Shown in pieces: positions 8,847 through 44,722 of a stretch of DNA of 64,000 bases. The position numbers were made by a program, and so were the translations under genes. Below the pieces are notes generated by a model. It was not told the DNA's origin. It worked only from the letters and a program-made list of their open reading frames with translations, and did not search any database. Location: assembly GCA_965649825.1 (NCBI GenBank), contig OZ287704.1, positions 360,101-424,100 of the forward strand, written 5' to 3'. The DNA comes from Penicillus capitatus (lineage: Eukaryota > Plantae > Chlorophyta). Numbering within the stretch: position 1 is the stretch's first letter; the number at the start of each line of letters is the position of its first letter.

Positions 8847-10212
8847 CGCCGATATAAGAATCGTGAACAGCTGCTATCCGAGAGGAAAGAGGATGATAAA
8901 CGGTATGTCTTTTGAGTCGACGAAGGACAGAAAGGGATCGTGTGAATAGTGGAATGGAACGGTTTTATAGTAGCGTTACACGTCAAATCACATCGAGATG
9001 TCGCGATCAGGGATCGACATCGCTATCGGCAAATCGACAAATCGGATCGGTTAGATCCTTTCTTGATGTGACAATTTTCCACGCAGTCCTAGCGTGCGAC
9101 ATCAGATTCTTTCAACCAACTAGACGAAAGGATGCATAGGCTGGATCATTTTAATCGCAGAAACGCGGACGACGAGACTGTATCTAGTGACGAAGGGTGT
9201 TACACCAGGAAGTGGAAGCCGTCGATTAACTGTCGTGCGCAATATTTCAAAGGAAAACGATACAGATATCGATTCCTTTCCTAGTGACACACTAAGATAA
9301 AAACAGATACTCAACTCCACGTGTTCGCGCACAGATCATCGTCGATAAACTCTGTCGCTAGCACGATCGGCCCCAGAACAATCGACACGACAAGTACGAT
9401 TGTAAAGTTGTCGAAAACCGAACAAACGATTTGTAATTCAACTTTAGCGATTCGGGAATACCACAAAGGCGGTTTCTGATCAATCGATTTCAAAAACACT
9501 AAAGATCGATTCACCGACTGAGAATTAACGATCACATGTCTATCGAACATTGACAATCGTCCAGCATGAAACGTTGAAAAATCGGTCATAAAAATCAAAC
9601 TCGATCGAATCGCTGAATGTCATCGAAGCGATCTATGCGTCCAGTGGTAAAATAGGTTTGTTCACGGTATCATGCATCACAAAGTAGCTAAAAACTCTTT
9701 GCACTCGGCTTTTACAAGACTATTTCAAAGCTACAAAATTGTGTGGTGAATCTTGTATCCTCTGGTATTTTTTCTTACGTGTCGATAATCTCGGCCATAA
9801 AAAATCGTTCAGGATTCAGTACACGCGTGTGCGAAATGTTACCCATCGGTACCAATCTTCTAGACCGCTGTCTAAACTACCAATGTAGTGTGGATATCTG
9901 ATGTGCCGCCAATAATGTTCCATGTTGTGTGTGCCTGTCGTTGAACCATTCATGTCCAGCATGCCCCAAGATATGCCTGGTTTCTATGATTTCAGCTGCA
10001 GAACACCTCGATCGATTTCGATCGAATATAGCGATGCGTGCGATATCAGTCGACGAGACGTGCCGTTTCAGACAACTTTATTGTTCAACTTATTGAAATC
10101 AAAACGCAGTTTAGAAAGCAAAATCGAACCGATCACTTCATTAATCATCGCGTCGTACCAGTGTCCGTTGTGAGAAGCACGTTCTTACCGTTCCTCGGAT
10201 CCAGCGGCCACA

Positions 10213-25552: not shown

Positions 25553-27652
25553 TCACACCCCATGATGAATCCTCGCCAAAAAAGACAGAACACGTGTATT
25601 TACGGCCTCCGGAGTCTCGTCGTGTCCACAGTGTCCGGCCTCTATCGTCTGGACGTCGATATGAGGACACAGTGCTTTTAGACGTTGCGCTCGATCTGCT
25701 GATTTGCTCAGGGGATCCAACGTTCCTTGAAGGAGGAGAACAGGGCGGGTGTATTTTTCAGACAGGAGATAGTTCAGAGGCTCTGGCTTCTTGAGAAAGA
25801 AGACGCTCTTGATGATCGCAATGGCATTGGGATCGTGTGATGCTCTGAGAATTTCGTCGAGAAAGGCCTGATCTGCGTGGCTTTGTTGCACAGGGTAGAC
25901 GGATTTTAGAATCCTCCCAGCCGATCTTTTCAAGTAAAACAGCAGAAGTTGACTTAGGATATCCACCAGGAAGGCAGGCAGACGCCAAGGCAGGACATCT
26001 GCCTGTCGGGAATCGTCGTTGGGGGTGTAGTCCTCGATTAAGGGACCAGCGGGGTTGATCAGAACGAGACCGGGTACAGCTTCGGGGTGATTGGCGGCAG
26101 TCTGTGCGGCCATAAACGCCCCGATGGAGTTTCCAGCCAGGACAGTAGATTCTCTTACGACGTCCGAAATGAAAGCCCCGAGAAATTCTGTCCACAGAGA
26201 TTGCGAGTATTTCATATAGAGTTTTTGTGTCCGGCCGAAACCGGGTAAGGTTGGGCAATAGACTGTGTAGCCGCTAGCTGTCAAGGCATCGACATTGCGC
26301 CTCCAATGCATGCAGGAAGCTCCAAAACCATGCACCAGCACGATGTGACCCTTGGGGGAAGAATCCTTAGGCTTAGAAACAGCAAACTCTGCCAGAAATC
26401 CTTGCCATCTCCAGAACCGTTTGACAGAGGATCCTGGAGTACTCTTGCAACCATTGCGCAGAACCTCCCGAGCCAGATAGCCATGAAAATCGAAAGATTT
26501 ACTGGAGAAGAGAGCCGCTTTCGACAAAGCATTCTGCCGCCCTCTCAGTCTTTCTTGCACTTCGCACACCACTCGACGAGGAGAAAGTATTCCCAAAGAG
26601 AGTGGAAGAGCAAAGAGCGAAGAGAACGAAATCCCAGGAAAGCTGCTATCCTCTGTAGTTAACATCATTTGTTGCAGCGTATTGTTTTCTGAACATTTGA
26701 CTGCGTAAGATGAGGCATCCAGGTATCGCTGAAGCCAACGAAGAGGCGATACTTGATCTGAACACAGATGGCTACTCCACTGTTGCCTTAGATCGATCGG
26801 ACAACTGTCGAGAGGATCGCTAAGAAAGACGCCATTCTGAAAATCCTTCTGTCTCGTTTGCATTAGTATCTGTTTCAAGTCATCGATGTCTGGAATCCGA
26901 CCATCCTTGTCGTGTCGTTTGTCCAAGTCAGCGGAAGGTAGTCTAGATGGAGGAGAGAGAGGCTTTTGGAGAGACTCTGTCCTCTGGATGTCTTTGAACA
27001 CTGGATCATAGTTTTGAGAGGAATACATTTGGCACGTCCATTCTTCGATGGCAACTCCTGGAACAGTTGCTTTGAAGTGGTCGATCGACTCCTGCCAGAT
27101 GATATCGACCTCAGTTTCTATCAGAATCGTTCGCGTTCCAATCTCCGTTACGAATTGGGCCAACGTCTCTGGAAAACTCCCGATACGGACAATCAGATAG
27201 CTATCCATCGCCATCAATGACTTCCTGAGAGAACAAAGGGCGCTGTGCAGCAACTCTACGCCGCCAGGGATGCGAAGGTACGAAAAGTAAAGCTCAGGAT
27301 CGAGGATGCATAGCGGAACAGCCGATCGGCCGCTTTGCAAGACGCGATGCAATCCGGGATGATCATCGACTCTAAGATCATGTTTGAACAGCAACACGAT
27401 CGGATGCGACACTTCAGTCGATGCATTGCGACACAGAGATCCTGAAGCAGGTCCTTCCACGTCAAAAACGGCTCGCGGTCCATGGAACACCTGCCGAGTA
27501 AGCCATCCACGGGTTCGCCGTCGTCGACTTATGCTCAGACATGCTGTGGTATGTTTTGAGACAAAGCTCCCTCTGTCGTTAACTTTGCACTCGATGGGCG
27601 GGCGTGAAAGATAATACGGCGATTGCTTCGTCCACGAGGCTGAGAGGAGCAT
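25553..27652 (-). CDS. Photolyase N-terminal domain fused to an alpha/beta hydrolase (plant/algal fusion family), single exon
   Basis: IVLLFKHDLRVDDHPGL (photolyase N-terminus). The C-terminal hydrolase has LVHGFGA, PTLPGFG, GNSIG nucleophile elbow and AGHCGHDETPE. Confidence 0.88.
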   Translation of the reverse strand: MLLSASWTKQSPYYLSRPPIECKVNDRGSFVSKHTTACLSISRRRRTRGWLTRQVFHGPRAVFDVEGPASGSLCRNASTEVSHPIVLLFKHDLRVDDHPGLHRVLQSGRSAVPLCILDPELYFSYLRIPGGVELLHSALCSLRKSLMAMDSYLIVRIGSFPETLAQFVTEIGTRTILIETEVDIIWQESIDHFKATVPGVAIEEWTCQMYSSQNYDPVFKDIQRTESLQKPLSPPSRLPSADLDKRHDKDGRIPDIDDLKQILMQTRQKDFQNGVFLSDPLDSCPIDLRQQWSSHLCSDQVSPLRWLQRYLDASSYAVKCSENNTLQQMMLTTEDSSFPGISFSSLFALPLSLGILSPRRVVCEVQERLRGRQNALSKAALFSSKSFDFHGYLAREVLRNGCKSTPGSSVKRFWRWQGFLAEFAVSKPKDSSPKGHIVLVHGFGASCMHWRRNVDALTASGYTVYCPTLPGFGRTQKLYMKYSQSLWTEFLGAFISDVVRESTVLAGNSIGAFMAAQTAANHPEAVPGLVLINPAGPLIEDYTPNDDSRQADVLPWRLPAFLVDILSQLLLFYLKRSAGRILKSVYPVQQSHADQAFLDEILRASHDPNAIAIIKSVFFLKKPEPLNYLLSEKYTRPVLLLQGTLDPLSKSADRAQRLKALCPHIDVQTIEAGHCGHDETPEAVNTRVLSFLARIHHGV

Positions 27653-28316: not shown

Positions 28317-28431
28317 CCGTCGGTTCGATTGCCGTCGATCGATCCCCGTCGGTTCGATTGCCGTCGATCGATCCCCGTCGGTTCGATTGCCGTCGATCGA
28401 TCCCCGTCGGTTCGATTGCCGTCGATCGATC
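28317..28431. repeat. Perfect tandem minisatellite, 29-bp unit x4 (CCGTCGGTTCGATTGCCGTCGATCGATCC)
   Basis: CGGTTCGATT recurs at 28321, 28350, 28379 and 28408. The units are identical and have no spacers. Confidence 0.95.
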
Positions 28432-28879
28432 TAACGTTTTTTGGGTGAGGCCCGATTAGGTGTACATCTGAATACCCGCCCCTCTGATGGCCATCTCCAG
28501 TAGCTGTGTACGCTAATATATTAATATATCCTTAACGGTCGTTCAAATCTGCGATCCGCTCATGCGCGTGTGTCTCAAAAAGTTCAGGTACAGAATTGAT
28601 GCATGACATTCTCTATTTTTACCATTCATATTTCATGTCGATTCGAGAGACAATCTTCGATGTAAAATACGAATACTTCCTCGTCTAAGTTTGTAAAGAC
28701 GTTCTTCTCTTCTGACAGAGTCCCGAAACACTCAAGTGTACACAACAAAGCACATATGCTTTCAGTTAGAAGCCATGATTATGATGTGTAAGTTATCAGA
28801 TTCAATAATCAATGTATTCAAAAGGGGCTAGGGTATCTTTTATCAATTTACTGCCTCTTTTATACAGAACGGATTGCTC

Positions 28880-30598
28880 TCAATCGAAACGATCCTCTGG
28901 CAGGAGTAATAATGGCTCATCCTCATCGGCGGATGTATCAGTTGTAGAAGTGGAGTTATTCGAATCCTCCTCCGAGATATAACCCCTGCCTGAAACTGGC
29001 ATATTGATGCAATTCTCCAGATCTTCATCGTCTGAATGAAAGGTCAGTGTGACGATGCGCAGAAAGACGGAAGCTGGCGTCACGAATCCGTACTTTTCGA
29101 CTCGAATGTTCAGCAATAGCAGCAATCCCGTAAGAGCCAAACAGAAGAACGAAATAAAAGGAGCTCTGGGAAAGTAAAACTCTCCGAGACGAAAGAGGGC
29201 AAAGAGCGAAGCATGGAAGAGAGGGGACAGGCCTTGAGCCAAGGCACGGACCCCTAACACGGCTTGATGGACTATAAACGAACTAGAGGAAGTACTGTGG
29301 TGATCAATGACACGATAGATCATCACAGTGATCAAGGCATCCATTGACCCAAACACCTCTAGAAAATAGGCCAGCATCTTGGACTTCACAAAGATCATGC
29401 CAAACAGCTTCACTGCCACCATGACAAATCCAAATCCAAAAGCATCTTTGTATGTGCGATTGCTGAAAAGACTCCAGAAAGGAAAGATGATGCTGTAGAC
29501 GAGCGTGACGACCAAGAAACGAATCATGAGGAAGGTTGACTGCTCCACCGTGCCAAATCCTGCGACTTCTTGAAGATACTGTAGCTCCAGCTCAGAATCT
29601 CTCTGCTGGATGAGTTCAAAGACCGCATAGACCAGGATCACGTTAGTCAAGTTAGGGTTCTTCGGCAGACGCTGAAAGGAGGCGTACATGTCTTCAAAAG
29701 GGCGAATCCAATGGAGATATGTCGTCCGACGGAGATTGTTGTGTGCATCGCCGGCTGCTAAGAAGCTATTCAGACTTGTAGATGGCGCAACAGATTCCGG
29801 CAGAAAAAGAAGACAGAGCAGTAGCGCTGTGCCAATCAATGCCAATAAGATAATGACTGCGTGCTGGACATCCTCTATTGCCTTGCTGGCCACCAGCATC
29901 GATCCCAAGAAAGAAGAGAAAGCGGCCAGAGTGAGATATGTCCAATACACCATGTCTGCTGACGACTCGTCGATGAGGTCGGCGAAGTACGATTGGCAGA
30001 GAGAAGGCAATGCGAAAGACAGTTCCCAAGCTTTGCCCACATAGTACCTGCACATCCAGACACACTCCTTATATTCAATCGGCAGGCGTCTTTAGCCGAA
30101 TGCTCACCAGTAGAATGGCAGGTTTGTTTGAAGGTGGAGAAGGAGGAGGACTGGTGGGATCAATGCATTGAACAGTGCAAGGAGGAGAAACGGTTTGCGT
30201 CCATAGATTGTGCTATATCTCTGAATGCAGGACCCGAAGACAATCGACAGGAAGAGCCGTGATATAAAGAGCTTCCCAGCATCGAAGAAGACAGCCTGAT
30301 TATGTGCTTTTTGGCAGATGTTGTCTCTTTGCTTTATTTCTTCTGCCTGATCAACGCATAAGTGCTTTTGGTTAGTCTGTTCCGAGACAAAGTATTCAGT
30401 GGACATGGTCGGAATAAATCCCCCTATGAGACCCCACCCTGGTCACAGGTACTTTGCGTATGACCGATTGCACGACGTTTGGCAGAGCGTACCAAAGTGC
30501 GTCAATGAGAGAAAGAGCATTAGCAGATAGGCACGTTTCTGGAGCATTTCGCGGACAAATCTGCAGAGAAGCCGTACTTCACTGCGTGTTAACGACAT
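28880..30598 (-). CDS. Major facilitator superfamily transporter (SLC46/HIAT-like), multi-exon; start approximate
   Basis: Motif A region YSTIYGRKPFLLL, FADLIDES, about 12 TM helices, acidic C-terminal tail ending in a dileucine-like EPLLLL. Confidence 0.8.
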
Positions 30599-30826
30599 CG
30601 CGGTTGATGTGTCTTTGTCGAGGAGTCAAGCAACGAGCGTCACTGTCTGCAATGAATTAAGGAATTTCTTAGCAATCGACACTAGGATTGTGTGTCCGTA
30701 TCAGACAAACCGAAAGTTTCGACAATTACAGTTGATCCGTTGCACTGAATGAACGGATGGTCAGTCAACGAAAGTTATTCATTTCAACAGAAACGCACGC
30801 TGTTTTTTCGTTTAGCTTATCTGAAA

Positions 30827-30861
30827 AATGAATGAATGAACAAACAAACAAACAAACAAAC
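30827..30861. repeat. Compound microsatellite: (AATG)n followed by (CAAA)5
   Basis: aatgaatgaatgaa caaacaaacaaacaaacaaac read directly. Confidence 0.85.
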
Positions 30862-30909
30862 CAATGAGCGTGAATTCTAGTTATTTGTCACGAAATGGGA
30901 CGATTGTTT

Positions 30910-31757
30910 TTATTCTGAGGCGTAGCGCAGGCGAACACAACTGACAATGATGGAATCTCCCTCATTCATTGGTTGATTATACGATTGAACCACAACTTGC
31001 ATCCCATGCTTCGATGCCGGATCCTGTAAAAGCTGTACAACGCTATTGATATTTATGGGGAGAACGTAGTAGATGTTGTTGGACTTGGAGGAAGGATAAA
31101 TGATTTGACCATTAACGTGAGAAGGGGAACCATTTCGGCACTGCATGGCAGCAAAGAAATCGCTATGCTCTCCTTCATTATAGTAAGCAGAATATGTTCG
31201 CATGCCGCGAGGTACCCGCACACAGATGCGGCGTTGATGTTGTGGCTGACTTCGCATGACAATGAAATAAATGTAGAGATCCCAGGAGAACATGCTTCGC
31301 AAACCAGATGCTTCAATCTCGTGCACTATATGCATCATGAGCTCTCGCTTTGTCTTCTCCTTGGAAAACACAGACGGAAGATGCTGAATATGATGCAGTC
31401 TCTCTATGCTCGGGAGCTGATAGAAATCGAGTTCTTTTTCAAGAATCTCTGGCCGAACAGACGGTAGGCAGGATGCATAATCGCCATCCCTAGAAAAGCG
31501 CGAAAATCTGAGTCGCGGAAACAAAGTAGTATGCCGCACCTGTAAATTTCAAGAATCCAAGAAAACATCTTAGGGTTTCGATCGATGTAGAGCGGCTCTC
31601 CTTTCTCGATAAGGTTTGGAAATTCTTTCGCCACTTTGGAAAGAAGGGAGTTTGGATAGCGGTCGAGAGACGGTTGCGAAATCTTGAAGGACTGTCCTCC
31701 GACGTCCAACAGCACAACAGGTTGGCGCCGCGGTAAAGAAGCGCGACTGTGTTCCAT
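30910..31757 (-). CDS. BTB/POZ (KCTD-type) domain protein, 2 exons
   Basis: VLLDVGGQSFKISQPSLDRYPNSLL...LYIDRNPKMFSWILEIYR | ...ILEKELDFYQLP. Confidence 0.85.
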
Positions 31758-32574
31758 CTTGCCTGAATTGCCTGATGCCACCAGCGATTGTTTTAAGAAT
31801 TGTTGTACCGTTTCGGTTGTATAGATTTTTGTAGGCCGGTACCAAAACTTGAAGAACACCCCTAGTCTTTTCGCCTGCCGCTACGCGGCATACTACTGTG
31901 AACATTTTTGGGTAAAAGGTCAACGTAAATTCGGTCGAAGCTCGATGATTGTTTCGGCCTAGATCTGTCAAAGCTGTCGGTTGTTCATAGTGTTTTCTCG
32001 AGAACTCAGTTCGTGAGTTCTTCGACGCATTCGACGGGCATGATGCCAAACCGATAGCGATGTTATGGACAGTACTGTAGTGAAAGGCTCGTATTTGGCA
32101 GAACCTGTAGAATACCTCTTTGCTGAATGTTCGTCGGATGTGGCATGTGTTTCGAACGTAGAAATCCCGCCACGCAGTCTAACCGCCGACGCAATGTTGC
32201 ATCACGCACACCTGTCGACTGAAGAACCATATCGGCCACGATCCCTCGTCGCAGCATCTCGACAAATGGACCGACACGAAAAGGCACTCAAGCCTATCCA
32301 AAAACGCCCTTATAGTCAACGTTCCGTCAGCCTTATCAGTCAATTGTGTCGCCCTGTCATGTTTCCATCAAGTTGTCTCTGTCGCGAAGTGTATGTACTG
32401 TTCTTTTATCGGCGAAGTCGACCGCCGTCATAGTAATTCATAGAGGCGGCCTCTTGAGCAGCATGCTCGTTAACTGTGTCTAGTACATCCTAGGCGATCA
32501 TCTTCGCATCAAGAAATGAAGGACGCCGTGGATTCCATCCGTTACATCATTGCTTTGCAGCGCCACGTTTGGAC

Positions 32575-35000
32575 ATGCAACCCGGTACTGTGTGTGCTGT
32601 GACGGCATTTTTGCTCGGCATCTGCCTGGCCGACTGCATTGTGAACGAAGGAACAGATGAGCCCCTGGAGAAACTCGATACGACTCTGGATGGAGGAGAC
32701 TGTGTTCTGCCTACTAAAGTAATCGCGTCGCTTGGTAGCATCCCCTATGACTGTCGTTTCTAGACACCAGATACGAGTGTCTTTGCGGGAGGACTCTGCA
32801 TCAATGGCGTCTTCGACCGAAGTGCACTAGTCTCTCACTAGTTTCTCACTTTGGATGCTGACTGTCTACAGCGGAAGGAGTTAATTTCCGAAGACGACGG
32901 GCTCACGAGACCATGGATGTCGCGACACTGCCAAAGGACTTCTTCTGGGGAGATATCCACGGCGTTAACTATCTGACTGTCTCGCGCAATCAGCACGTCC
33001 CGCAGTAATCGCGTCTCGGATGACGTTCAACAGCGTCATGGGTACTGCAGATACTGTGGCAGTTGCTGGGCGTTTGGCACCACTTCTGCTATTTCCGACA
33101 GGATGAAGATCGAACGTCGCAACGCCTTCCCCGAGATCAACCTGGCGCCACAGGTTTTGATCAACTGCCGTGGTGGCGGAACCTGCCAAGTGCTTGCCCA
33201 TCATCTGCTGTATGGTTTTTTATCCCGATCATGTGAAGGGTGGCACAGCGGTAGGCGTTTATTACTACATGGCACAGCACGGTCTGCCCGACGAGAGCTG
33301 TCAGAGTTACCAAGCAAAGAGCAGCAAATGCGGATCACATGGAGTGTGTGAAAAGTGTGAAATGATGGGAGACCGTAGCACATGCTCTGGAGTGCATCAG
33401 TACCGTCGTTATTTCATCGAAGAGTTTGGCTCTGCAAGCGGCGGTTCGGACTATGATGGTCACAACCAGCAAGTGTCTCGTAGTCAGAAGATCATGGCAG
33501 AGATCTATTCTCGCGGCCCTGTGGCATGCGAAATTTTTGCCACGAAGAAGTTTGACAAGTACACAGGCGGAATCTTCACCGAAGTGCGAACTGTCACATC
33601 GCAATACCCACTCGAGTCACGTTGTGCCTAGTTTGGCGTTTGGGCAACAGGCAATCACATCGTGAGTCTTGTCGGATGGGGAGAGGAAAATGGCATCGAG
33701 TAAGGAGACTCCATGCCAAAGAAAGATCGATCTAAAAAGATGTAAGACTTGCAGGTATTGGATTGGACGGAACAGTTGGGGAACCTACTGGGGGGAGAAC
33801 GGGTATTTCCGTATCGCTAGACCGAGTCTGTTCTACGGTTTGGGTGTCGAAAATAGTTGTACCTTTGCAACGCCTGTCATCTCAGATAAACTCCAGCCCA
33901 GCGACCCTCTGCCAACGTCACTTTCTCTCCTCAAGACAGCTTGAGAACTTTGATTTTTAGAGATGTGCCGTGGGGAGAGTATCTCTTAAAATATCATGCT
34001 GAGAAGCAGAAAGAATCTTCATTTACATTACAACAAGAGAAGGTAGTGAGGGTTGTGGAAATTCCGATGAAGTACGACATCCGTAACATCGATGGCGTCA
34101 GTTATGCATCGATTGATCGAAATCAGCGTAGCCCAATGTACTGTGAATCTTCGTGGGCCCATGCAGCGACCTCTGCTCTAAATGATCGTTTTGCACTGCT
34201 CAGAGGAACAACTTATCCAGAAATCGTTCTCTCTGTTCAAGTGAAGATCGTTTCACATATCGATGTTTGCATGAGTGCTAAAGCGTCTAGGTTTTGCTAA
34301 ACTGTGTGAAAGGCAATGGAGAGTGTGAGGGAAAAGATCCAAGTGATGCCTATGACTATATTAAGAGGCACACCATTCCAGACGAATCCTGCTCTCCCTA
34401 CGAAGGAAAGCCTCTCGCATGTGATGCTATTCACATTTGCAAAAGCTGTTGGTTAACGGGATGCTACTCCATGAAAGCAGGAGAATACACACCATACACA
34501 ATTTCATCCCACGGAAGGGTGACATACTGTGTTCTTTTCTGCCGAGGTTTACGTGGTCCGACATACAGGTCTCCGGGGATGAGGCTGTGATGCAGGAGAT
34601 TGCGCAGAATGGCCCTGTTGCTTGCCGCATTTGCGCGTCCAGTGCATTCCGTTCCTACCAAAATGGCATCTTCAGTGGTCCAGATGCATGCGAGGGTAGC
34701 AGTTCAAACCAGTTCGTCGTCCTCTCTGGATGGGACGAACAAAACGGCAAGAAGTTCTGGATCGGGCGAAACAGTTGGGGAACCTACTGGGGGATTCATG
34801 GCTGGTTTCACCTAGCCATGGGCGACGGAGACCTTGGTGTCACAGATGAATGCTATTGGGCGACACCCGAGAAGCCCATGTACAGATATCTCTTTTCAGG
34901 AGGGCATCAAAAGACTAAAGCCGTGGCGGGTCTCAGAGATGTCTTCCTCTATGCGTCTCAATATCAAACAAACCATATGCGTTCGGCATCCAGCACGTGA
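32575..35000 (+). CDS. Secreted two-domain cathepsin Z/X-like (C1A) protein A: active domain followed by inactive domain, multi-exon
   Basis: Signal peptide. Domain 1: NQHVPQYCGSCW, GNHIVSLVGWG, RNSWG. Domain 2: NQRSPMYCESSW (Cys to Ser), SNQFVVLSGWD (His to Gln), RNSWG. The two domains are joined through an inferred intron ending at 33960. Confidence 0.82.
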
Positions 35001-35098
35001 GAGCGACCACTGTTGGTTGTTGTTCATGTCAATTTTTGAAGAACTGTTAGAAAAGCATTAGGTGTTCGATCAGATTTGTTTTGTCTCACAGATTATGC

Positions 35099-35800
35099 TC
35101 AATCGGCATCCCATACCAAAACTTCTTTGTGAAGAAACTGCCACATAGATACCCTTTGATCAAATGTGTTGTCGAATACGTTCGAGAATTCGATGAAAAA
35201 ACTTCTGCACCGTTTCCGAACTGCCATACGCCTCGTGCAGTGCCTAAACACAGGAAGCGTCCATTCATGCCTGTTGCATGGAGTGTCTTGCCGTTTCTTT
35301 CTGATCGGATGTGTCAATGGCCTGCAGAACAGACCGAAGACTCTCGTCCTTCAACATCTCCCTTATCTCACTATCCGCCACTGCAGATAGAGAGACCTTC
35401 ACAAAGATACTCATGCGATGGACACATCCCACCTACCCAATGCTTCGTAGTGTTGCGGTTTCAGAAGCCACTCTTCGTCCATCGTTTCCTGTTCCCATCT
35501 CGGTACTTCATCTTCGCGTTTCTTTTTGCATGGAGCAAGGCAGACGCAGATTCGCTCGATGGCATGACTCTCTTTGTGCCGCGCCACACAACGCACGAAA
35601 CCTTCGAAGGTTACGTTTGGATGGTAGGCATCGAGGGCTCCACTCGGCAACGTTCCAACGCGAACAGTCGATCTCTCGATCTTCAGCACGGCCTCAGCCT
35701 CACTGCGCTCCACCAGAATCTTATCACCCGGTCTCGGGTGAGCGAGCGATGCCGGGTCGGTTGTGTCGAGGATGATATCAAAGTTAAAACGAGGACGCAT
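35099..35800 (-). CDS. Hypothetical protein: N-terminal beta-rich (HIRAN-like?) domain plus ZNHIT3/HIT1-like C-terminal helical domain, 3 exons
   Basis: Spliced product ...EEWLLKPQHYEAL|VADSEIREMLKDESLRSVLQAIDTSDQKET|ALHEAYGSSETVQKFFIEFSNV resembles the ZNHIT3 C-terminus. The second intron is GC-AG (35244-35291). Confidence 0.55.
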
Positions 35801-35812
35801 GATTATAACACC

Positions 35813-37915
35813 ATGTCAGCATTCTGGACACTCTTGCTGTGGCTCTCTTGCGTCGCTGCTTCGACTGAACATGGTCTCCCGTCGACGACGCTACCTGCTA
35901 CATGGTTCTGGGGAGATGTCGATGGCATCAACTTTCTGACGCGAGTGCAGAACGAACGTGCACCGAGGTGTGTGAATCTCTTTCTGCCTTATGTTTGGCG
36001 AAGAACGTCGTCGATTGGACAGATACTGCCGAGCGAGTTGGGCACTCTCGACGGTCGCGGCTCTCTCCGACCGTTTAAAAATTTCGAATGGTGCTCAGCA
36101 TCCTGCTCCATCTTTATCCCCTCAAGTCCTCCTCAACTGCGTGTCTGCCACTTCAAACTGCTCTGTGCGTTTTACGTGACTGAGTCGTTCGCATGGAGTA
36201 TATCCGTTTGTTTGCAAGGGTGGGAATCCAATGGATGCACTAGAGTACATTTCGCAGGTGGGTATCCCTGATGACACGTGCGAGAACTATGAAGGCAAGG
36301 AAGGCGTCTGCGATGCCATTGGCATATGTCGCGACTGCGGTCCAGGCAACGTGTCAGCAGGAGAAGTCAATCACCTCCATTTCGGATGCACTCGAAACGT
36401 GCATTACAGGATTTCTTGGATGGGCATTGCATTGCCATCGACAATTTTCCGCTGTATCGACTGGAGGCATATGGTGATCTCAGAAGAAATGATGAAACGA
36501 AGAGGGTGCATTCGATGACGGAACGGATGAAAGAAGAGATCTACACTAACGGATCCATTACGTGTCGCATTCAACCCTCGACAGAATTTGTGAACTACAA
36601 AGAGGGTATCCTCTCCCCCTCCTCCCCCGCATCAGCATTGTCAACAAGTGAGGCTCATTTCATTAACGTCGTGGGATGGGATGCGACAAGTGACAAAAAG
36701 TGATCTTCGCTTTACATAATATAACTGGACAGCGGTGTCATGTTTTGAGGTTTTGGATTGGGCGGAATTGTTGGGGAGAATCGTGGGGAAATGGCGGTTT
36801 TGTTCAGATCGAGATGGGCATCAATGCGTTCGGAATCGAATCGCATTGTTTTTGGGGCACTATTGCTCCATCGAGATCATCCAATCAGCGTCCGAATGGC
36901 GATGTCAATGAAAAAGAGGACGATCACGGCCCTTATCAAATCAGCAGAAGCCGTCGTTCACATGGTCCCTGTCGCTGTGCGATGGATATCGAGGGACTGT
37001 CTCTACCTTACCGTCTACCTCGGTCACATGTGGAGAATGCTGATATGCCACAGTCGTACGATATTCGCAGTATCGACGGCCGGAATTATGCTGTCATGGA
37101 CAAGAATCAACATCTCCCTGTGTACTGTGGATCGTGTTGGGCCTTCGCTGCCGTCTCCGCATTAGCCGATCGATATGCCTTGCTTTACAAACAAGATGCT
37201 CCACTGTTTGACTTAGCCACTCAGGCATCGCACTGATGGAATGTACGCTAACGTCTGATCTGCACATTTGTGATTCAGGTGGTCATCAATTGCGCCGAAG
37301 GGACGAAAGGTTGTCGAGGTGGGCTGCCTCACTTTGCCTATGCTTACATTCAAGAACATGGATTGCCGCATGAGAGCTGTGCCCCTTATCAAGCGATCGA
37401 TCAGCCGTGCACTTCGATCAACATCTGCAAAAGCTGTCGAGAAAACGGCACTTGCACAGCTTCGTCGGAAGAGACCTTTCGACATTTTAGCGTCGAGGAC
37501 TACGGCGTCTTTATCGGAGAAGAGAACATGAAACAGTTGATCTGGAGCGGAGGACCCGTTGTTTGCCTCGTCTCTTATACTTCGGAGCTTCATATGTATT
37601 CCGGAGGCATTTTTAACGACACCACTGGCAGACGGTCCTTCGATCATGTCGTTGAGGTAACAGGCTGGGGTACAGAGAGTGGAGTGGACTACTGGATTTT
37701 CCGTAACAGGTGAATTCGACATCTCGCACTGTTTCGATTGATAGTTGTGTGGTGATAGTTGGGGGACCTACTGGGGTGAACAAGGATGGGGACGGATTGC
37801 CATGGGTCCAGGGGATCTTGGGTTGAGCAGTCTACTGTGCAGTTGGGCAACGCCGAAGCCATTCACCACAGCACTGCCTTACCAGACATTCTCACGCCGA
37901 CAGCAAATCGTTTAG
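35813..37915 (+). CDS. Secreted two-domain cathepsin Z/X-like (C1A) protein B: inactive domain followed by active domain, multi-exon
   Basis: Signal peptide MSAFWTLLLWLSCVAA. Domain 1: NERAPRYCRASW (Gln to Glu, Cys to Ser), AHFINVVGW, RNCWG. Domain 2: NQHLPVYCGSCW, DHVVEVTGWG, RN|SWG. Stop TAG 37913-37915. Confidence 0.85.
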
Positions 37916-38924
37916 CTTATTTGACAAGACTTGACGAACATTGCATTCTTGTGGTATTTTTTGGTTGTATGAAGATCACAGCAATCGAAATTGACATCTA
38001 GACGACGGTCATGTGTCCGCAATTGGAAGCGAGAACATGCCGTAAAAGCAATGTCGTCAAATAGCCTGCAAGTAATTAACGATGATGGTTATTACTCTAT
38101 GTCAAGTGTGACATTCGTCGGCGATATGGAAGCGCAGATGATGTATATAGTAACTGAATAATGATAAGAATGTCTGTTGTGAGGTGGTGCTTTTGGCGCA
38201 AAAGAACACGCTTGCAAAAGGCCCGGCATTATTGAAAACACATTCGTGTGGGATTCCATCGAGATTGAACACTTCAGCTAATATGTTTGCAAGTCACACT
38301 CGCGTAATCATGACTTTGAAGCAGTTCAAAGGCTGAATGCAAAAGCGCGATCTTGTGCGAAAGTATACCCACCGCCTCGAAGCATAATGTGAGATCCAAG
38401 TCGTTGATTTATGATGCATACGAATATCTCGCTCGAAGGCCTCGTGCAAAAAAGCTCATGCAATTGGACAGGCCAAACTTTGCTGATCGATTGGATATCG
38501 ATATCCGATCGACAAATCGACGACGCCAAAGAAGTCGTCGCAACGATCTTGGCGGTTTTTTACACTTTCGGATTGTTTCTGGCCAGGACAGCACTCAAAG
38601 AGCTGGGATCAGATCTAATCGGATGTTTCGGGAGCCATAGGCATTAATCGCCATGTTTCTGCTTATTTGAGCCTCGATCATGCCTTATCGTATGCCAGCA
38701 GCCATCGAGGTCCTATCTTTGACATCTGTCGGACACGCAGGTTACGGCCGCTGGCGCGCTGAGTAGGCGACTTCCTTAGGCAAAGAGTGTCAAGCACGAG
38801 GAGATTTGTCGTTCATCGAATTGCGGGGATCTCTCAACACATGTGACTTCAACCGAGAAATCGCTTAGCAGTACTATTCAGGTGATGTCAATGTCTTTGG
38901 GACCTTACATCATGCAGTTGCTCG

Positions 38925-40060
38925 TTATTGCCGGTGACCGCTATCTGCGTCCGGCATGACATTCCAGATGTCATTATCTTTGATCGCCTTGTTTTGGACT
39001 TCCGTGTTAACAAAGTTAATGTTGTCGCGGAGAATCCATGCCACAACCGGTGTGGCATCCTCAACGGAGACTCCCACCGCCGCGTACGTCTGATGCAATT
39101 GGTGTCCAAACTTCTGCGCCTGAACCGCCGATATGTATGGCATGCGAAACGGAACTGTGCTGGTGTTCTCCTAGTTCTTTGTCTTATGCATGACGAAGTC
39201 GATCGGATGGCGGAAGCCCTGGTGGACGATGAACGGGTTCCACCTTCTGAGAGTACGGACTGTCACTTGCCCATCTTCCGATTCGGAGACACTCGTGTGA
39301 GGTATCCCCTTCAACGTACTGGTATCCTGCTGTCTGTTCAGGAACCTCTGATTTGCTGTCCAGTTCGATATCTTGCGTACGACCTGCTCTTGGATCCATG
39401 AGTTCAGCTTGTCCACCGAGTATCCCCTCTTCGCGAATCTTACGCAGAGCTCCTTGAGACGGCGGTTCAGCCATGTCATCTCGCTGTTGAGTTTGAGCTC
39501 CCTCGACACTGATTGCTGGACCACCGCACGGAACGTTGTAGGAGGATGATTCGAAGACTCCATTATATACTGATGAGCGGACTCCTTAATGTGGCTGCGT
39601 GTTAGCAGCGCCTTCCCGTCTGGACTTGCATACACTTCCATATCCAGAAACGTCGTCCCAGACCTGTTTTGAGGATCAGTTGATGTCAGTCTGAGCGAGG
39701 GCATGTTCTCTGAATAGATCGAAGCGAGCCAGTGATCCACCGCCTCCTGTGAGGCAAAATGAGGATTATCCGCCGGAGCTACCAGTAAGATGTCATCTAT
39801 ATATCGGCCAAACAAGTATGTATTGGCGTAGATCTGTCCAAGGCATGGCAGCTCACATCGGTACCACACAGCAAGTATGGCAGCGATGGGACTCAACGAG
39901 TAGCCCATCGCGAGGCCCTTCTCCTGTTTTTTAGTAGGAGAAGCCGCTACGTGTTGCCGTCTTGATGACTACCCCTCCGAGCGCATATCTGAAAAGTAAG
40001 GTAAGCACAATGTGCCAGTCGGTCTCGATAATCCAGCCAGAGAACTGTAGGATTTCTCTT
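38925..40060 (-). mobile_element. Decayed, 5'-truncated Penelope-like retroelement (PLE) reverse transcriptase relic
   Basis: Y-KKQEKGLAMGYSLSPIAA, FGRYIDDILL (RT catalytic motif), FLDMEV, HQYIMESSNHP...RFAKRGYS (PLE thumb), followed in frame by MPYIS...PVVAW. A 1-nt frameshift lies at about 39933 and an in-frame TAG at 39171-39173. Confidence 0.85.
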
Positions 40061-41388
40061 TTCGTAGGCTCGTCGGAACCATCAGATATGGAGATCGGGA
40101 GATGATGGAACGACAATCGTTAGAGGAAATTCTATCTTCTCATGATATGCAACGAACGATCGATCATTTTGCGGAGAACCGATTCAAATTACAATCGATT
40201 CGGCCAGATCGATCAATCGATCGTTCCGAAAACCACGTCGATCGTTGCGATCGATCAATTCGACGTCGATTTCCGATGATCGACGATCGATGATCTAATT
40301 CTCTTTATCAAATCCTTAATAAGTAACAGACACGTCCTCTGGCAAAAGGATCTTGGAATGATTGCTTTCATTACCTTGCCGATTGCCTTCGGCATACGAC
40401 AAATGAAGCTATAGATGCGAGCGTCCATTTCGCCTGATCGTTAAAGAAGTATAGAGGACGGTTTTGCGTTCTCGATAGTGTGACCGACGATATGATAGAA
40501 CGCGACGTTTCTTTTAACTGCTGGCAGTGATGGATGATCAATCGTTCCGGTTAACCTCAAAAAAGTTTCTTTATAAAGCCTGATGTCCGTCTAAATGTCT
40601 TCTGTGCAAACGAACCAATGCAAAACGCACGCACTTGCAGGTGGACCTTAAAGAAACCTGATAAACAGCGATTTTGCTTTGGCAGAAAAAACGGCTGTTT
40701 GTTAAGATGACGGACTCTGTGCTCTCCTTAAGGTACATAAAGCAAGTTACTTTCGTTTCTTGGAGGATCTCCTCAGGTCTTCGTCTGAAAAAGTACTCGC
40801 CTCATTTCGAGAAGCGATTAGAAAGCGACACCTCTTCTAAACTGAATAAACACTCACTTGAAAGCTTCTTACTTCCTCTAGGTACTCCGATGCTATAGAA
40901 TTTCATGAACAATCTCATATTTGTACATTAGATGCACATAAGAAACGGCTGGCGAAGCTGTTGTGGCTGTCGGGAGACCTGTAAAGTGAACAGAGGCATA
41001 TCTCAGCATCCACGTGCAAGAATGATACGGATTCGTCGTGTCGTCAACGAAGAACATGTGCCTATTCAAGCGCAAGAGAAACGCAACGAACACATTGAGG
41101 CATCAGCAGAGCGCTTTCGCATCGAAAGACTCCAACCTGTTGCTTTTGATCGTAATTTGGAGATGCAGACAATCGATGCATGGTACTTTAGATCAGTGCA
41201 CACACAGAACCGGTTAAACACTAGTAAAACATAAGACTGTCACCACCATCAGCTTTGTTACACAAACCAGACAGATCCAACAGGTAAAATGCAAAATCAT
41301 TGCAACAAGCCATTGTATCATCGACACTTAAACCAGTAGAGCACCTCTCGTGAGCCAAAGACTCTGACAATGCATTATCCGAGGACAT

Positions 41389-42186
41389 TTAGTCGAAAGC
41401 CCATTGATTCTCACGACGAACTTCCTCCTCCTCTTCTGGTGTAAAATCATTCTGGACCACAAACACCGCTCTACTATACCAGCCAGACCTCATACGTCCC
41501 ACGTACCTTGATATTGAATGTCCTGCGGATTTCTTCTGGTGACTTGCCTGCGTCCATTATCCATATGTGAGTAGGAAATGAGAAGTGGAGAATCATTTAC
41601 CCTTGATCAGATAGGCGACGGTTTGACAGCAGAGATCCAGTAGCGGTGCGATGTTTAAGTAATTTGCTGCCTGTCGTACAGTTCTCACACTTCTACCCCC
41701 ATAACATCGGATGCTTACTAGAATGAGATCATACAGAGTACTCTGATCGACACGCATGTATTCGTTGTCGAAGCTCTTGATTTCCTCATCGCTTTTTCGA
41801 GGTTTATCGTCATCGTCCTTCGCTTCAGCTTCGACATGAAATGTGCAGTATTCGAGAACCTTGGACAGAACATTGCCTGCATCGGAAATGCGCCTTTGCA
41901 TCCTGTTCCCTAGCTACAGAGCGGTTGTTTACCCTTAACGTTGCACAGAGGCACACTCTGGTTCTCAACGTCCTCGATGTCTACACAACGATTCACGTTA
42001 GACATCCATCCTTACGCTTCGGAAGCGGCTGACCGTTCAGCATCTTCGCTATCATTTCGCTCTGAACGGCGACCTCTCGCGGAACCTCGAAAGTGGTCTG
42101 GTCGGAAGAGACCAACGTAATCGTCTGTAGAAAAACGTCGGGCGTGATGCACCGGATGAAGGGCGACTTACTGTTTTGTCTTCCAT
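41389..42186 (-). CDS. SKP1: SKP1 (SCF adaptor), multi-exon
   Basis: [28 protein letters not shown]|[33 protein letters not shown]|[20 protein letters not shown]. Confidence 0.95.
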
Positions 42187-42340
42187 GTTTGTCCAGATGG
42201 ATGACAAAGATGAATGCAACAACAACACGAGAACACGGAAGAATCGATGGCGTTGAAAGCGCGCAGCGATTTATAATGCCGCATCACAACGCATAATGCG
42301 TTTCATAAACGTCGGATTTACAGAGAAGCTGGAAGGGAGA

Positions 42341-43732
42341 ATGAAGGATACGGAGCCATGGGTCGAGAAGTATCGTCCTCAGACACTCGACGATCTCGTC
42401 ACTCGTTCGGAAGTCGTCGAAACATGTTCTCTATCCCATCCATACCTATTCATCTCACACCATCTGTCGGTTCTTCAGTAAAGCGTCTGACGCAGCAAAG
42501 CTTCTTTCCACATCTGTTGCTGTTCGGTCCACCGGGAACGGGCAAGACTTCAGCGATACTGGCAGTGGCCCGATTGCTTTATGGATCGCACCAAAGTCAC
42601 CCTTTCATCTCATCGGAGAGGACCACTCACTGCATGAGATGTTGTGCAGAGAAGATGGTGTTGGAACTGAATGCTTCTGATGATCGAGGGATCCAAGTTG
42701 TGCGAGAGACCATCAAAGAATGCGCCAGCAGTAATGCTCTTGTTCCACTGGGGTAAAGTCAATGCTGCGTGCACATCATCCTCACTCTTCACAAAGAGCT
42801 TCTTAGGGGAAAGATGCCATTCAAGTTAATTGTACTCGATGAGTGTGACAACATGACGAAAGATGCTCAGATGTCGCTAAGACGAGGTAAGGGACGAAGT
42901 GTGAGGCAAAAGAATGAGAATGGCGACAGTGATGGAGATGTCGATGAAACATGTCAGGTTCTGTCTGATGTGCAATCATCCTAACCAGTTGCTTCCAGCC
43001 ATCCGTTCTCGATGCACGCAGCTGCGTTTTCCTCCCCTCGATCCCGATCTCATCAAATCACGTCTCCGTCAGATTCTGCTAAACGAGCGGTTCAGATGAC
43101 ACTTCCCTGCAGCTCGAGAGATATCTATCTTTCCGTGGCATAGGATGATCATGACGTCCGAAGCATTGACTGCTCTAATCCGTATTGCATCAGGAGACCT
43201 GCGCTATTCTTTGAACACGCTGCAGGCAAGAGTCTCTCGAAGACCGTCTGACTGATGCGCTGAATGGTTGCAGATTCTGAATACGACAGGAGAGGAGATT
43301 GGCGAGAAGGAAGTGTACGAAGCACTGGGCCATCCGTCCCCAGAAGACATTCGCCATATCCAATACCATCTTCTCAATATGACTCTTGAAAAAGCTTACT
43401 CCACCATCTCAAATCTTTGCAAACAACAGGTCGACGACACCAGGAAAGCATTGGCATTCTGTGTCGCGCTCCAGGGGTACGCTTTGATCGATGTCCAGCG
43501 TGAGGTGGCAGAGAATCTATGGAAGGAAGGGGCCATTCCACAAGAGATCCTAGTCAGGATGTTGGTGTACATGTGAAAGATGAACTATGTTTTTGACTAG
43601 GTGGATCTGATTGCGAAGATGGGAGATTATGAGGCGAGACTTAGCGGTGCAGCCAACGAGCATCTGCAGCTTCTGGGCTGGATAGGAAGCTTCCTCGAAG
43701 CGAGAGAGTCTCTGATGAAACAAGCAAAATAG
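42341..43732 (+). CDS. RFC5: Replication factor C small subunit (human RFC5 / yeast RFC3 type), multi-exon
   Basis: [63 protein letters not shown]-terminal EHLQLLG. Confidence 0.88.
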
Positions 43733-44722
43733 CACATGCATTCTGTTTCATACACATGAGACAAACGAATACCAGCTGCATTTAAGCATCATAGTGTGTC
43801 ACTGCCATACCGCAAAGCATCGGCGTGAACGCTGTGCTTTGTACATGTCCCATGGAGAAGACGTTTTCGCCATTGCCCTCATCAGACAGACGAAGAGAGT
43901 ATCCAATTCGTAGATACCAAGTCCAAGGAAACGCGAAGCCAATCGACAAGCATCTTCACATCGAGGGCCTATATCGCCATGATCAGGAATTCAGGCTGAG
44001 GATCATTGCAACAACAGCATCAAAAACAGGGGACGAAATCGGGCGACGTCTTGCAGACGAGGCTTCATCAGGAAAGACTCCGACAGTTCCAGTATCTCGA
44101 AATTGTCAGGGAGCATTTCATTGATGAGATGAGGGGGAGTGTCTTACCGTAACGACATGATCTTCTGAAAGCAGTATGATGTCGAGGCCTGAATTGTATG
44201 GATTGATGAGAGTCAGAGAGTCTTTGTCGACGACACGAACATTGAGCGAATGACTTTGATATGGAGTTTAAGATGACGCAGCATGGCACCAAATTCTCCA
44301 TCAGACAGGGCAACTGCAAGCCCCATCATCGCCAACATGAACGATGCAATCGAAATGAGGGCACAAAGGACGACTGCCTTAGAAAGTGATAGAGAGGTCA
44401 AACGGTGCTCTCCGGAATCCGAGTTCGTTTAACTGAAGAAGTTAATAAGCCAGCACCAGATCCCAATAGTCTTCGGACGTGTCCTCATGCGACGTCCCTT
44501 TGAGAAAGGATCGGCTGCTGTCGTCATATCTCCGCTGTCACCTTTAGCGGAATCCAGGTTTTCAGAACAATCCCTCTTGTCTTTCAGTATCTTACTACTT
44601 GATTTGAGACTTGAGTTAGTCGGTCAACTCATCGATCGATTTCGATCGGGTCGATGGGTTATGATCACGGTTATGATCACACTCGAGAAGTGATTAAAAT
44701 GTGTCGATACTTAGTGACATTG

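What the first reader, a model, noticed from the sequence alone, without database searches (positions are those of the whole stretch)
32575..37915. Mirror-image pair of two-domain cathepsin Z genes: active+dead and dead+active
All four domains have the cathepsin X/Z mini-loop region (Q-H-x-P-x-Y-C). Gene A domain 1 is intact (CGSCW, His, Asn), while domain 2 has lost both Cys (CESSW, Ser codon 34151-34153) and His (NQFV). Gene B has the reverse arrangement: domain 1 is CRASW (Ser codon 36036-36038, oxyanion Gln to Glu) and domain 2 is intact (CGSCW at 37126-37140). Reciprocal inactivation in neighbouring secreted paralogs suggests enzyme/pseudoenzyme modules, where the dead domain acts as a substrate clamp, inhibitor decoy or heterodimer partner. 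This may be an undescribed secreted proteolytic or wound-response system (inference).
Basis: partly seen in the sequence, partly recalled or inferred. Interest (0 to 1): 0.7.

Follow-up and report, generated by a model that had tools for sequence, protein, structure and literature searches.

The report
Paired half-dead tandem cathepsin X genes
Two neighbouring genes of an uncultured green alga each encode a double cathepsin X protease with one copy catalytically disabled (the second copy in one gene, the first in the other); selection keeps the disabled copies, making this a real but modest new variant of known protease and pseudo-protease evolution.

Summary
Gene A (32575-35000, 10 exons, 662 aa) and gene B (35813-37915, 7 exons, 593 aa) lie on the + strand. 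Each encodes a signal peptide and two cathepsin X domains. A is active+dead: domain 2 has Cys to Ser and His to Gln. B is dead+active: domain 1 has Gln to Glu and Cys to Ser, with His and Asn kept.

Both models transfer in frame, with splice sites kept, to two copies in a related assembly at about 81% nucleotide identity. There the dead domains have dN/dS of about 0.12 and the active ones 0.06-0.10, so they are not decaying. Each dead domain has also lost the cysteine of its own propeptide.

Double cathepsin X proteins are not new as sequences. They occur across eukaryotes, mostly with both domains intact, and single-domain inactivation has happened many times. What is particular here is the adjacent reciprocal pair. 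It is conserved in at least three related algae, but some loci carry only A or only B.

Nothing supports a wound-response role, and a clamp, decoy or A/B heterodimer role is untested. The most interesting open point is B's first domain. Its remodelled site is better conserved than the working protease domain.

The parts
32575..35000 (+). Gene A, tandem procathepsin X, 662 aa. Exons: 32575-32718, 32764-32821, 32872-33004, 33051-33189, 33239-33583, 33632-33699, 33755-33916, 33961-34240, 34291-34518, 34569-35000.
   Evidence: Hand-built model. Introns are 44-55 nt and GT-AG. It projects in frame, without stops and with splice sites kept, onto L003 and L004. Exons are 87% identical and introns 74%.
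32575..32924 (+). Gene A signal peptide and N-terminal propeptide, with the propeptide Cys at 32797-32799.
   Evidence: The spacing from this Cys to the AHE motif is the same as in the closest homolog, P0002, and the segment matches the consensus propeptide of the family.
32925..33881 (+). A domain 1, catalytically intact: Gln 32991-32993, His23 32994-32996, Cys 33064-33066, His 33656-33658, Asn 33771-33773.
   Evidence: Matches 1DEU at 1e-67. dN/dS 0.096.
33917..33960 (+). The 44-nt intron in the A linker, which holds the TGA at 33942-33944. Donor is GTCACT.
   Evidence: Donor and acceptor are kept in L003 and L004, where the intron is 50 nt. L011 has a 42-nt intron at the same position and phase. 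In all three the unspliced reading hits a stop.
34058..34874 (+). A domain 2, dead: Ser at the Cys position (34151-34153), Gln at the His position (34710-34712), Arg at His23 (34127-34129), and the second Gly of the conserved Gly-Gly pair replaced by Lys.
   Evidence: CESSW is kept in L003, L004 and L011. All structural Cys are kept in the window copy. dN/dS 0.116.
35813..37915 (+). Gene B, tandem procathepsin X, 593 aa. Exons: 35813-35967, 36023-36164, 36219-36350, 36410-36699, 36750-37224, 37279-37709, 37759-37915.
   Evidence: Projects in frame onto L003 and L004. Exon 36750-37224 runs from the end of domain 1 through the linker into domain 2 without a stop.
35888..36867 (+). B domain 1, remodelled or dead: Glu 35954-35956, Arg 35957-35959, Ser 36036-36038, His kept 36656-36658, Asn kept 36766-36768, new Cys 36769-36771. 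No propeptide precedes it.
   Evidence: The same substitutions are found in L003, L005 and L010. dN/dS 0.122. It is 67% identical to the L005 paralog, against 60% for domain 2.
36868..37041 (+). B linker, carrying an internal propeptide for domain 2 with Cys at 36970-36972.
   Evidence: Aligns with the conserved linker propeptide of the family. dN/dS 0.24, against 0.70 for the Cys-less A linker.
37042..37861 (+). B domain 2, catalytically intact: Gln 37108-37110, His23 37111-37113, Cys 37135-37137, His 37645-37647, Asn 37705-37707.
   Evidence: dN/dS 0.057.
37225..37278 (+). GC-AG intron of gene B.
   Evidence: No GT donor gives an open frame. The GC donor is kept in L003 (GCATCA) and L004 (GCATTA).

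Best explanation
These are two paralogous genes for tandem (double) procathepsin X in an uncultured green-lineage alga. The double architecture is old and widespread in eukaryotes: a signal peptide, then two units, each a short Cys-bearing propeptide followed by a cathepsin X domain.

In this algal lineage a two-domain gene was probably duplicated, and the copies lost catalysis in opposite halves. A keeps a working first domain and B a working second domain. Each disabled domain also lost the propeptide cysteine that would latch its active site.

Shown: the gene structures, the residue pattern, its conservation in relatives, and purifying selection on the dead domains.

Inferred: each precursor enters the secretory or lysosomal route. 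The live domain is held latent by a propeptide-Cys to active-site-Cys disulfide, as in human procathepsin X, and after activation it works as a carboxy-monopeptidase, because its His23 mini-loop is intact. The dead domain stays folded and packed against the live one as a non-catalytic partner, in effect a fixed pseudo-dimer, that supplies binding surface or stability rather than chemistry.

A and B are best seen as complementary survivors of a duplication. They need not be a coupled two-gene machine.
For: - Gene models and residues.
- Cathepsin X identity: Pfam PF00112 twice per protein; 1DEU at 1e-67; the AlphaFold model of B matches 1EF7 with TM 0.94 and 1DEU with TM 0.89.
- Architecture is old and common: about 116 of the 120 best hits have two domains, from choanoflagellates, oomycetes, Blastocystis, green algae, rotifers, ciliates and dinoflagellates; 79 have both domains intact.
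- One two-domain ancestor for A and B: the two first domains share three intron positions and a 13-residue insert, and the two second domains share another intron. The A-type and B-type second domains are sisters in a neighbour-joining tree with 59% bootstrap.
- Conservation: A and B project in frame onto L003 and L004 with the same dead signatures.
- Selection: dN/dS is 0.116 for A domain 2 and 0.122 for B domain 1, against 0.096 and 0.057 for the live domains. Neutrality is rejected at about 1e-17.
- Fold: all structural cysteines are kept in the window's dead domains, and losses at family-invariant positions cluster at the active site.
- Propeptides: the propeptide Cys is present before both live domains and absent before both dead ones. 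The A linker evolves near neutrally (0.70) and the B linker is constrained (0.24).
- Packing: the model of B has pLDDT 88.7 and pTM 0.89, which implies a defined packing of the two domains.
- Dimerisation: PMC10380794 states that human cathepsin X dimerises.
Against: - No transcript or protein data exist for this organism. Splicing of the A linker intron rests on a weak donor (GTCACT) plus cross-species conservation.
- The pTM comes from an alignment dominated by homologs with two live domains. I could not inspect the interface.
- Tree support for A and B being sisters is weak. B's first domain sits on a long branch that cannot be placed.
- Gene A is closer to the fully active P0002 (59% and 52% identity per domain) than to B (34% and 44%).
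- One of the two near-identical copies in the relative (L004) has lost an invariant disulfide Cys in A domain 2. This hints at some relaxation.
- Cleavage in the linker during activation could separate the domains, which would weaken the pseudo-dimer idea.
Confidence: 0.6

Rival explanations
1. B's first domain is not dead. It is re-tooled: a conserved Glu, Ser, His, Asn and new Cys site with a new catalytic (serine-type) or ligand- or metal-binding function. This function, rather than the protease domain, would be why gene B is kept.
For: The same set of changes is present in all four B-type sequences from window, L003, L005 and L010: Gln to Glu, Gly to Arg/Lys, Cys to Ser, Ser to Cys next to the Asn, and GWG to GWD, with His and Asn kept. 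Between B and the L005 paralog, domain 1 is 67% identical and the live domain 2 is 60%. The best-kept 25-residue stretch (88%) is the helix carrying the former nucleophile.
Against: A Ser for Cys swap in papain-fold enzymes usually abolishes peptidase activity (general knowledge). Nothing here tests activity. The high conservation could reflect an interface rather than chemistry.
Confidence: 0.2
2. The dead domains are passive baggage. They are kept only because the fused live domain needs them to fold, be exported or be sorted, and they have no binding or regulatory role of their own.
For: dN in the dead domains is about twice that of the live ones. The L004 copy has lost an invariant Cys in A domain 2. 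The A linker is near neutral. Dead-domain variants arise often in the family.
Against: dN/dS of 0.12 is strong constraint for mere baggage. The remodelled active-site residues are themselves conserved: CESSW in three A-type genes and C[RK]xSW in four B-type genes. B domain 1 is more conserved than B domain 2.
Confidence: 0.15
3. A and B form an obligate two-gene system. Their products pair up, the dead half of one serving the live half of the other, for example in a wound response.
For: The order A, small gene, B is kept in the window, in L003 and L004, and in the more distant L010.
Against: L005 has a B-type gene with no A. L011 has an A-type gene and the small gene but no B within 2.7 kb. 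Dead-domain genes of three other lineages have no C1 neighbour. There are no data on expression or interaction and nothing about wounding.
Confidence: 0.08
4. The four domains are four separate genes, or the dead ones are pseudogenes.
For: There is a TGA at 33942-33944, and the donor of the A linker intron is weak.
Against: B's two domains share one exon. A domain 2 has no conserved start codon: the only nearby Met in the window is Ile in the relatives. The intron position and phase are kept in three lineages. There are no stops or frameshifts in any copy, and dN/dS is 0.12.
Confidence: 0.03

Closest known systems
Human (pro)cathepsin X/Z (PDB 1DEU, 1EF7)
   Same: Same fold. Same three-residue mini-loop with His23 in the live domains. 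Same very short propeptide carrying a Cys. About 40% identity, TM 0.89-0.94.
   Different: The human enzyme has one domain. Here two domains are fused, one of them without a nucleophile and without its propeptide Cys.
Two-domain cathepsin X proteins already in databases, for example Salpingoeca rosetta 'cathepsin Z' (P0019), Monosiga MONBRDRAFT_34651 (P0011), Aphanomyces 'cathepsin X' (P0026, P0027), Blastocystis (P0004), Closterium and Trebouxia
   Same: Same architecture: leader, propeptide, domain, linker propeptide, domain. They align over 90-95% of B at 33-45% identity.
   Different: Most (79 of the 120 listed) keep both active sites. I found no paper that describes this family.
Other double cathepsin X proteins with one domain inactivated (P0075, P0057, P0079 with a dead first domain; P0094, P0096, P0100, P0106, P0109, P0366, P0371 with a dead second domain)
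   Same: Same kind of loss, with Cys replaced by Ser, Gly or Ala in one half.
   Different: These are independent events in unrelated lineages. The three checked have no reciprocal neighbour.
Papain-family pseudo-proteases with Ser in place of Cys (Plasmodium SERA5, sponge silicateins, TINAG). Named from memory, not tested here.
   Same: Cys to Ser at the nucleophile, with the fold retained and the protein kept by selection.
   Different: They belong to different subfamilies (cathepsin L- or B-like). They are not fused to a live twin and not arranged as a reciprocal gene pair.

Membership tests
Cathepsin X/Z (MEROPS C1A, carboxy-monopeptidase type) | Papain fold (Peptidase_C1), with cathepsin X as the closest solved relative | tested here: met
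   PF00112 twice in each protein. 1DEU at 1e-67, well ahead of cathepsin B at 1e-27. Model TM 0.94 to 1EF7.
Cathepsin X/Z (MEROPS C1A, carboxy-monopeptidase type) | Complete Gln, Cys, His, Asn catalytic set | tested here: met
   Met for A domain 1 and B domain 2. Not met for A domain 2 (Ser, Gln) or B domain 1 (Glu, Ser).
Cathepsin X/Z (MEROPS C1A, carboxy-monopeptidase type) | Three-residue mini-loop between the oxyanion Gln and the Cys, carrying His23 | tested here: met
   The loop length is present in all four domains. His23 is present in the two live domains (QHVPQYC, QHLPVYC) and is Arg in the two dead ones.
Cathepsin X/Z (MEROPS C1A, carboxy-monopeptidase type) | Short propeptide whose Cys bonds covalently to the active-site Cys | tested here: inconclusive
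   A propeptide Cys stands at the conserved spacing before both live domains and is absent before both dead ones. The disulfide itself cannot be tested with these tools.
Cathepsin X/Z (MEROPS C1A, carboxy-monopeptidase type) | Carboxy-monopeptidase activity | not testable with these tools
   Needs an enzyme assay.
Pseudoenzyme (pseudo-protease) domain | Loss of a residue essential for catalysis | tested here: met
   Cys to Ser in both dead domains. In addition His to Gln in A domain 2 and Gln to Glu in B domain 1.
Pseudoenzyme (pseudo-protease) domain | Retained under purifying selection with the fold intact | tested here: met
   dN/dS 0.116 and 0.122, neutrality rejected at about 1e-17. All structural Cys kept in the window copies. 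pLDDT is mostly above 90 across B domain 1.
Pseudoenzyme (pseudo-protease) domain | Demonstrated lack of activity and a non-catalytic function | not testable with these tools
   Needs activity-based probes and binding assays.
Complementary degeneration after gene duplication (subfunctionalisation) | The two genes are each other's paralogs from one two-domain ancestor | tested here: inconclusive
   In favour: shared intron positions within each domain class, and adjacency. The A-type and B-type second domains are sisters at only 59% bootstrap. B domain 1 cannot be placed.

The most novel reading that the evidence does not exclude
The first domain of the B-type genes is a re-tooled papain fold, not a dead one. 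A fixed constellation (Glu48, Ser57, His226, Asn246, Cys247) is conserved more tightly than the neighbouring true protease domain. It would carry a new chemistry (a serine-type or metal-assisted reaction) or a specific ligand-binding role. The A and B genes would then have been kept side by side because their products work on the same substrates.
Probability: 0.15. Interest if true: 0.7.

Novelty: new variant of a known kind. Interest (0 to 1): 0.45.

Why it matters
- It is a clean natural example of complementary loss at the level of domains, not whole genes. Two fused enzyme copies are duplicated as a unit, and each duplicate keeps a different half alive.
- Each dead half also lost its own safety latch, the propeptide Cys. 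This shows that the zymogen control and the chemistry decay together.
- The dead halves are clearly kept by selection, so the locus offers a matched enzyme and pseudoenzyme pair for asking what a disabled papain fold is good for.
- The work also shows that double cathepsin X proteins are widespread in eukaryotes, repeatedly half-inactivated, and apparently undescribed in the literature I could search.
- It has no evident medical or applied weight.

Tried and rejected
1. A 30-nt intron (33621-33650) in A domain 1. I replaced it with the 48-nt intron 33584-33631, which restores the spacing seen in human cathepsin X and fits the intron size range.
2. A single first intron for gene A. No GT-AG pair gave the right phase. 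Two introns of 45 and 50 nt with a 58-nt middle exon give a propeptide that matches P0002 residue for residue in spacing.
3. The 16-kb stretch 28431-44698, missing from the syntenic locus L001, as a mobile island. Rejected: it has no flanking repeats and it carries Skp1 and a replication factor C subunit. It is a rearrangement.
4. Convergent His23 to Arg in both dead domains as a sign of retained C-terminus binding. Weakened: the relatives have His at that position in A domain 2, and L010 has His in B domain 1.
5. An upstream extension of gene B through the open frame 35081-35812. Rejected: substitutions there fall on the third codon positions of the opposite strand, and the relatives have stops in the + frame.
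6. Literature searches for a described two-domain cathepsin X or a link to Caulerpa wound plugs found nothing relevant.
7. A search of 1.84 billion representative proteins with B domain 1 found no full-length B-type relative above 42% identity.
Only gene B was modelled.


Full report
**What the window is**

The window is eukaryotic, with about 49% G+C and introns of 44-59 nt. It comes from a 593-kb contig of ENA assembly ERZ25074695.

The organism belongs to the green lineage:
- A photolyase/hydrolase fusion at 25553-27652 has its best named relatives in chlorophytes and land plants, led by Ostreobium at 37%.
- A CASTOR/POLLUX channel is present.
- In a close relative the cathepsin pair sits next to a photosystem I PsaH gene.

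No named genome is close.

**Gene models**

I built both genes by hand from the three-frame translation and checked every junction.
- Gene A has 10 exons (32575-35000, 662 aa). Its introns are 45, 50, 46, 49, 48, 55, 44, 50 and 50 nt.
- Gene B has 7 exons (35813-37915, 593 aa). Its introns are 55, 54, 59, 50, 54 and 49 nt. One of them is GC-AG.
- Both genes are on the + strand.
- A tblastn scan finds no further cathepsin domain in the window.

**The observation**

Pfam finds two Peptidase_C1 stretches in each protein.

| Domain | Motif around the nucleophile | His | Asn | State |
|---|---|---|---|---|
| A domain 1 | NQHVPQYCGSCW | kept | kept | intact |
| A domain 2 | NQRSPMYCESSW | Gln | kept | dead |
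| B domain 1 | NERAPRYCRASW | kept | kept | Ser variant |
| B domain 2 | NQHLPVYCGSCW | kept | kept | intact |

The two Ser codons differ (TCG in A, AGT in B), as expected for independent events.

**Is each gene one reading frame?**

For B, yes. Exon 36750-37224 runs from the end of domain 1 through the linker into domain 2 without a stop.

For A, the TGA at 33942-33944 lies in a 44-nt intron with a weak donor (GTCACT). Four lines of evidence support splicing:
- The intron length falls within the tight size range of the other introns.
- Donor and acceptor are kept in the relative, where the intron is 50 nt. The two lengths differ by separate indels of 4 and 2 nt.
- A more distant relative (L011) has a 42-nt intron at the same position and phase.
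- In all three the unspliced reading meets a stop. The second domain has no conserved start codon, because the window's nearby Met is Ile in the relatives.

The linker after the intron also matches the G-x-Y-x-x-Y motif of the family's linker. Without RNA this remains an inference, but a strong one.

**The family**

A search with gene B returned 303 proteins, of which the best 120 were listed.
- About 116 of the 120 carry two cathepsin X domains.
- They come from choanoflagellates, oomycetes, Blastocystis, green algae, a bolidophyte, rotifers, a ciliate and a dinoflagellate. Several are already named cathepsin X or Z.
- In 79 of them both domains have a full catalytic set.
- A minority have real substitutions in the first or the second domain. 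Some apparent losses are only truncated sequences.
- A search of representative proteins with B domain 1 brought up many more half-dead and fully dead relatives.

So the double architecture is old, and inactivation of one half is recurrent. I found no paper describing this. One survey of the papain family lists 'C1 domain duplication' and 'loss of active site' only as table rows, and notes that cathepsin X dimerises (PMC10380794).

**Propeptides**

In the family each domain is preceded by a short propeptide with a conserved Cys, as in human procathepsin X.
- A has this before domain 1, with the same spacing as its closest homolog, P0002.
- A's linker has lost the Cys.
- B has no propeptide before domain 1. 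The leader runs almost straight into the domain.
- B keeps the linker propeptide with its Cys before domain 2.

Each dead domain has therefore also lost its own latch.

**Relatives and selection**

A related assembly (ERZ26696514) carries the syntenic flanks at 85-86% identity but lacks window 28431-44698 at that site. The block 30550-38058 is found elsewhere in that assembly, twice (L003 and L004, 98.7% alike), at 81% identity to the window. The block holds a BTB gene, A, a small antisense gene and B.

Both models project onto both copies in frame, with no stops. All splice sites are kept, including the GC donor, and the dead signatures are the same. Exons are 87% identical and introns 74-79%.

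Nei-Gojobori estimates against L003:

| Region | dN/dS |
|---|---|
| A domain 1 (live) | 0.096 |
| A domain 2 (dead) | 0.116 |
| B domain 1 (dead) | 0.122 |
| B domain 2 (live) | 0.057 |
| A linker | 0.70 |
| B linker | 0.24 |

dS is 0.4-0.7. Neutrality is rejected at about 1e-17 for both dead domains and is not rejected for the A linker.

Of 47 columns that are at least 90% conserved in active family members, A domain 2 keeps 40 and B domain 1 keeps 36. These include every structural Cys, and the losses sit around the active site.

One caveat: the L004 copy has lost an invariant Cys in A domain 2.

**Deeper relatives**

- L005 is another contig of the same assembly. It carries a B-type paralog with the same domain 1 signature and a live domain 2, directly after a BTB gene, with no A.
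- L010 is from an SRA run. It has the end of an A-type gene, the small antisense gene and a B-type gene. The B-type gene has NEHTPRFCKSSW in domain 1 and a live domain 2.
- L011 is from a JGI metagenome. It has an A-type gene with a dead domain 2 (CESSW, His lost) and the small gene, but no B within 2.7 kb.

The reciprocal pair is therefore old and kept in at least three taxa, but it is not obligatory.

Between B and the L005 paralog, domain 1 is 67% identical, domain 2 is 60% and the linker is 23%. The best-kept stretch (88%) is the helix that carried the nucleophile. All four B-type sequences share Gln to Glu, Gly to Arg/Lys, Cys to Ser, Ser to Cys beside the Asn, and GWG to GWD.

Dead-domain genes of three unrelated lineages have no second C1 gene nearby.

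**History**

The first domains of A and B share three intron positions and a 13-residue insert. The second domains share another intron.

In neighbour-joining trees:
- A-type domain 2 forms a clade with 100% support, as do B-type domain 1 and B-type domain 2.
- A domain 1 joins P0002 at 72%.
- A-type and B-type second domains are sisters at 59%.
- B domain 1 is a long branch that cannot be placed.

This fits duplication of a two-domain gene followed by opposite losses, but the support is moderate.

**Structure**

AlphaFold2 on gene B with 84 sequences gave pLDDT 88.7 and pTM 0.89. Only the leader and residues 286-309 are disordered. The model matches 1EF7 and 1DEU. A pTM this high for two domains implies a defined packing. 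I could not examine the interface.

**Verdict**

The specific roles and the wound-response idea are not supported. This is a new variant of known things: cathepsin X, domain duplication, and pseudo-proteases. It is of moderate interest, and the conserved remodelled site of B domain 1 is the point most worth an experiment.

Noticed in passing
window 35411-35800 (- strand): A conserved small gene (129 aa; 144 aa in the relative) lies between A and B. Its start codon is only 12 nt from B's ATG, head to head. It is 90% identical in nucleotides to L003, with 28 of 38 substitutions at third codon positions. Homologs follow the A-type gene in L010 and L011. It has no Pfam match.
   Followed up: partly
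window 28431-44698 versus L001: This 16-kb stretch is absent from the otherwise collinear locus of the related assembly. Only its 7.5-kb core (30550-38058) is found there, on other contigs next to PsaH. The stretch also holds Skp1 (41593-41901, -) and a replication factor C subunit (42358-43576, +), so it is a rearrangement and not a mobile element.
   Followed up: partly
window 28317-28431: Four or five copies of a 29-nt tandem repeat sit exactly at the left edge of the synteny break. A similar repeat is present in L001 at 8804-8958.
   Followed up: no
window 37225-37278: This is a GC-AG intron in gene B. The GC donor is conserved in both copies of the relative.
   Followed up: yes
L004 versus L003 (A domain 2): The two 98.7%-identical copies of the block in the relative differ at an invariant disulfide Cys of the dead domain (EECEGRD in L003, EERESKD in L004). 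They may be alleles or a recent duplication, one of them starting to decay.
   Followed up: no
window 30910-31859 (- strand): A BTB/POZ (BTB_2, 1.9e-12) gene travels with the cathepsin block. It also stands directly upstream of the lone B-type gene in L005.
   Followed up: partly
window 62271-63218 (+ strand): This is a trypsin-like ORF (PF00089, 2e-8). The usual TAAHC motif around the catalytic His reads TVASC, so it may be another protease homolog without its catalytic His.
   Followed up: no
window 39171-39908 (- strand): This 245-aa ORF has a YIDDILLV motif reminiscent of reverse transcriptases, but no significant Pfam hit. It may be a retroelement remnant inside the rearranged stretch.
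   Followed up: no
window 25553-27652 (- strand): This 699-aa single-exon gene fuses a photolyase N-terminal domain to an alpha/beta hydrolase. The architecture is shared with green algae and land plants. It served to place the organism.
   Followed up: partly
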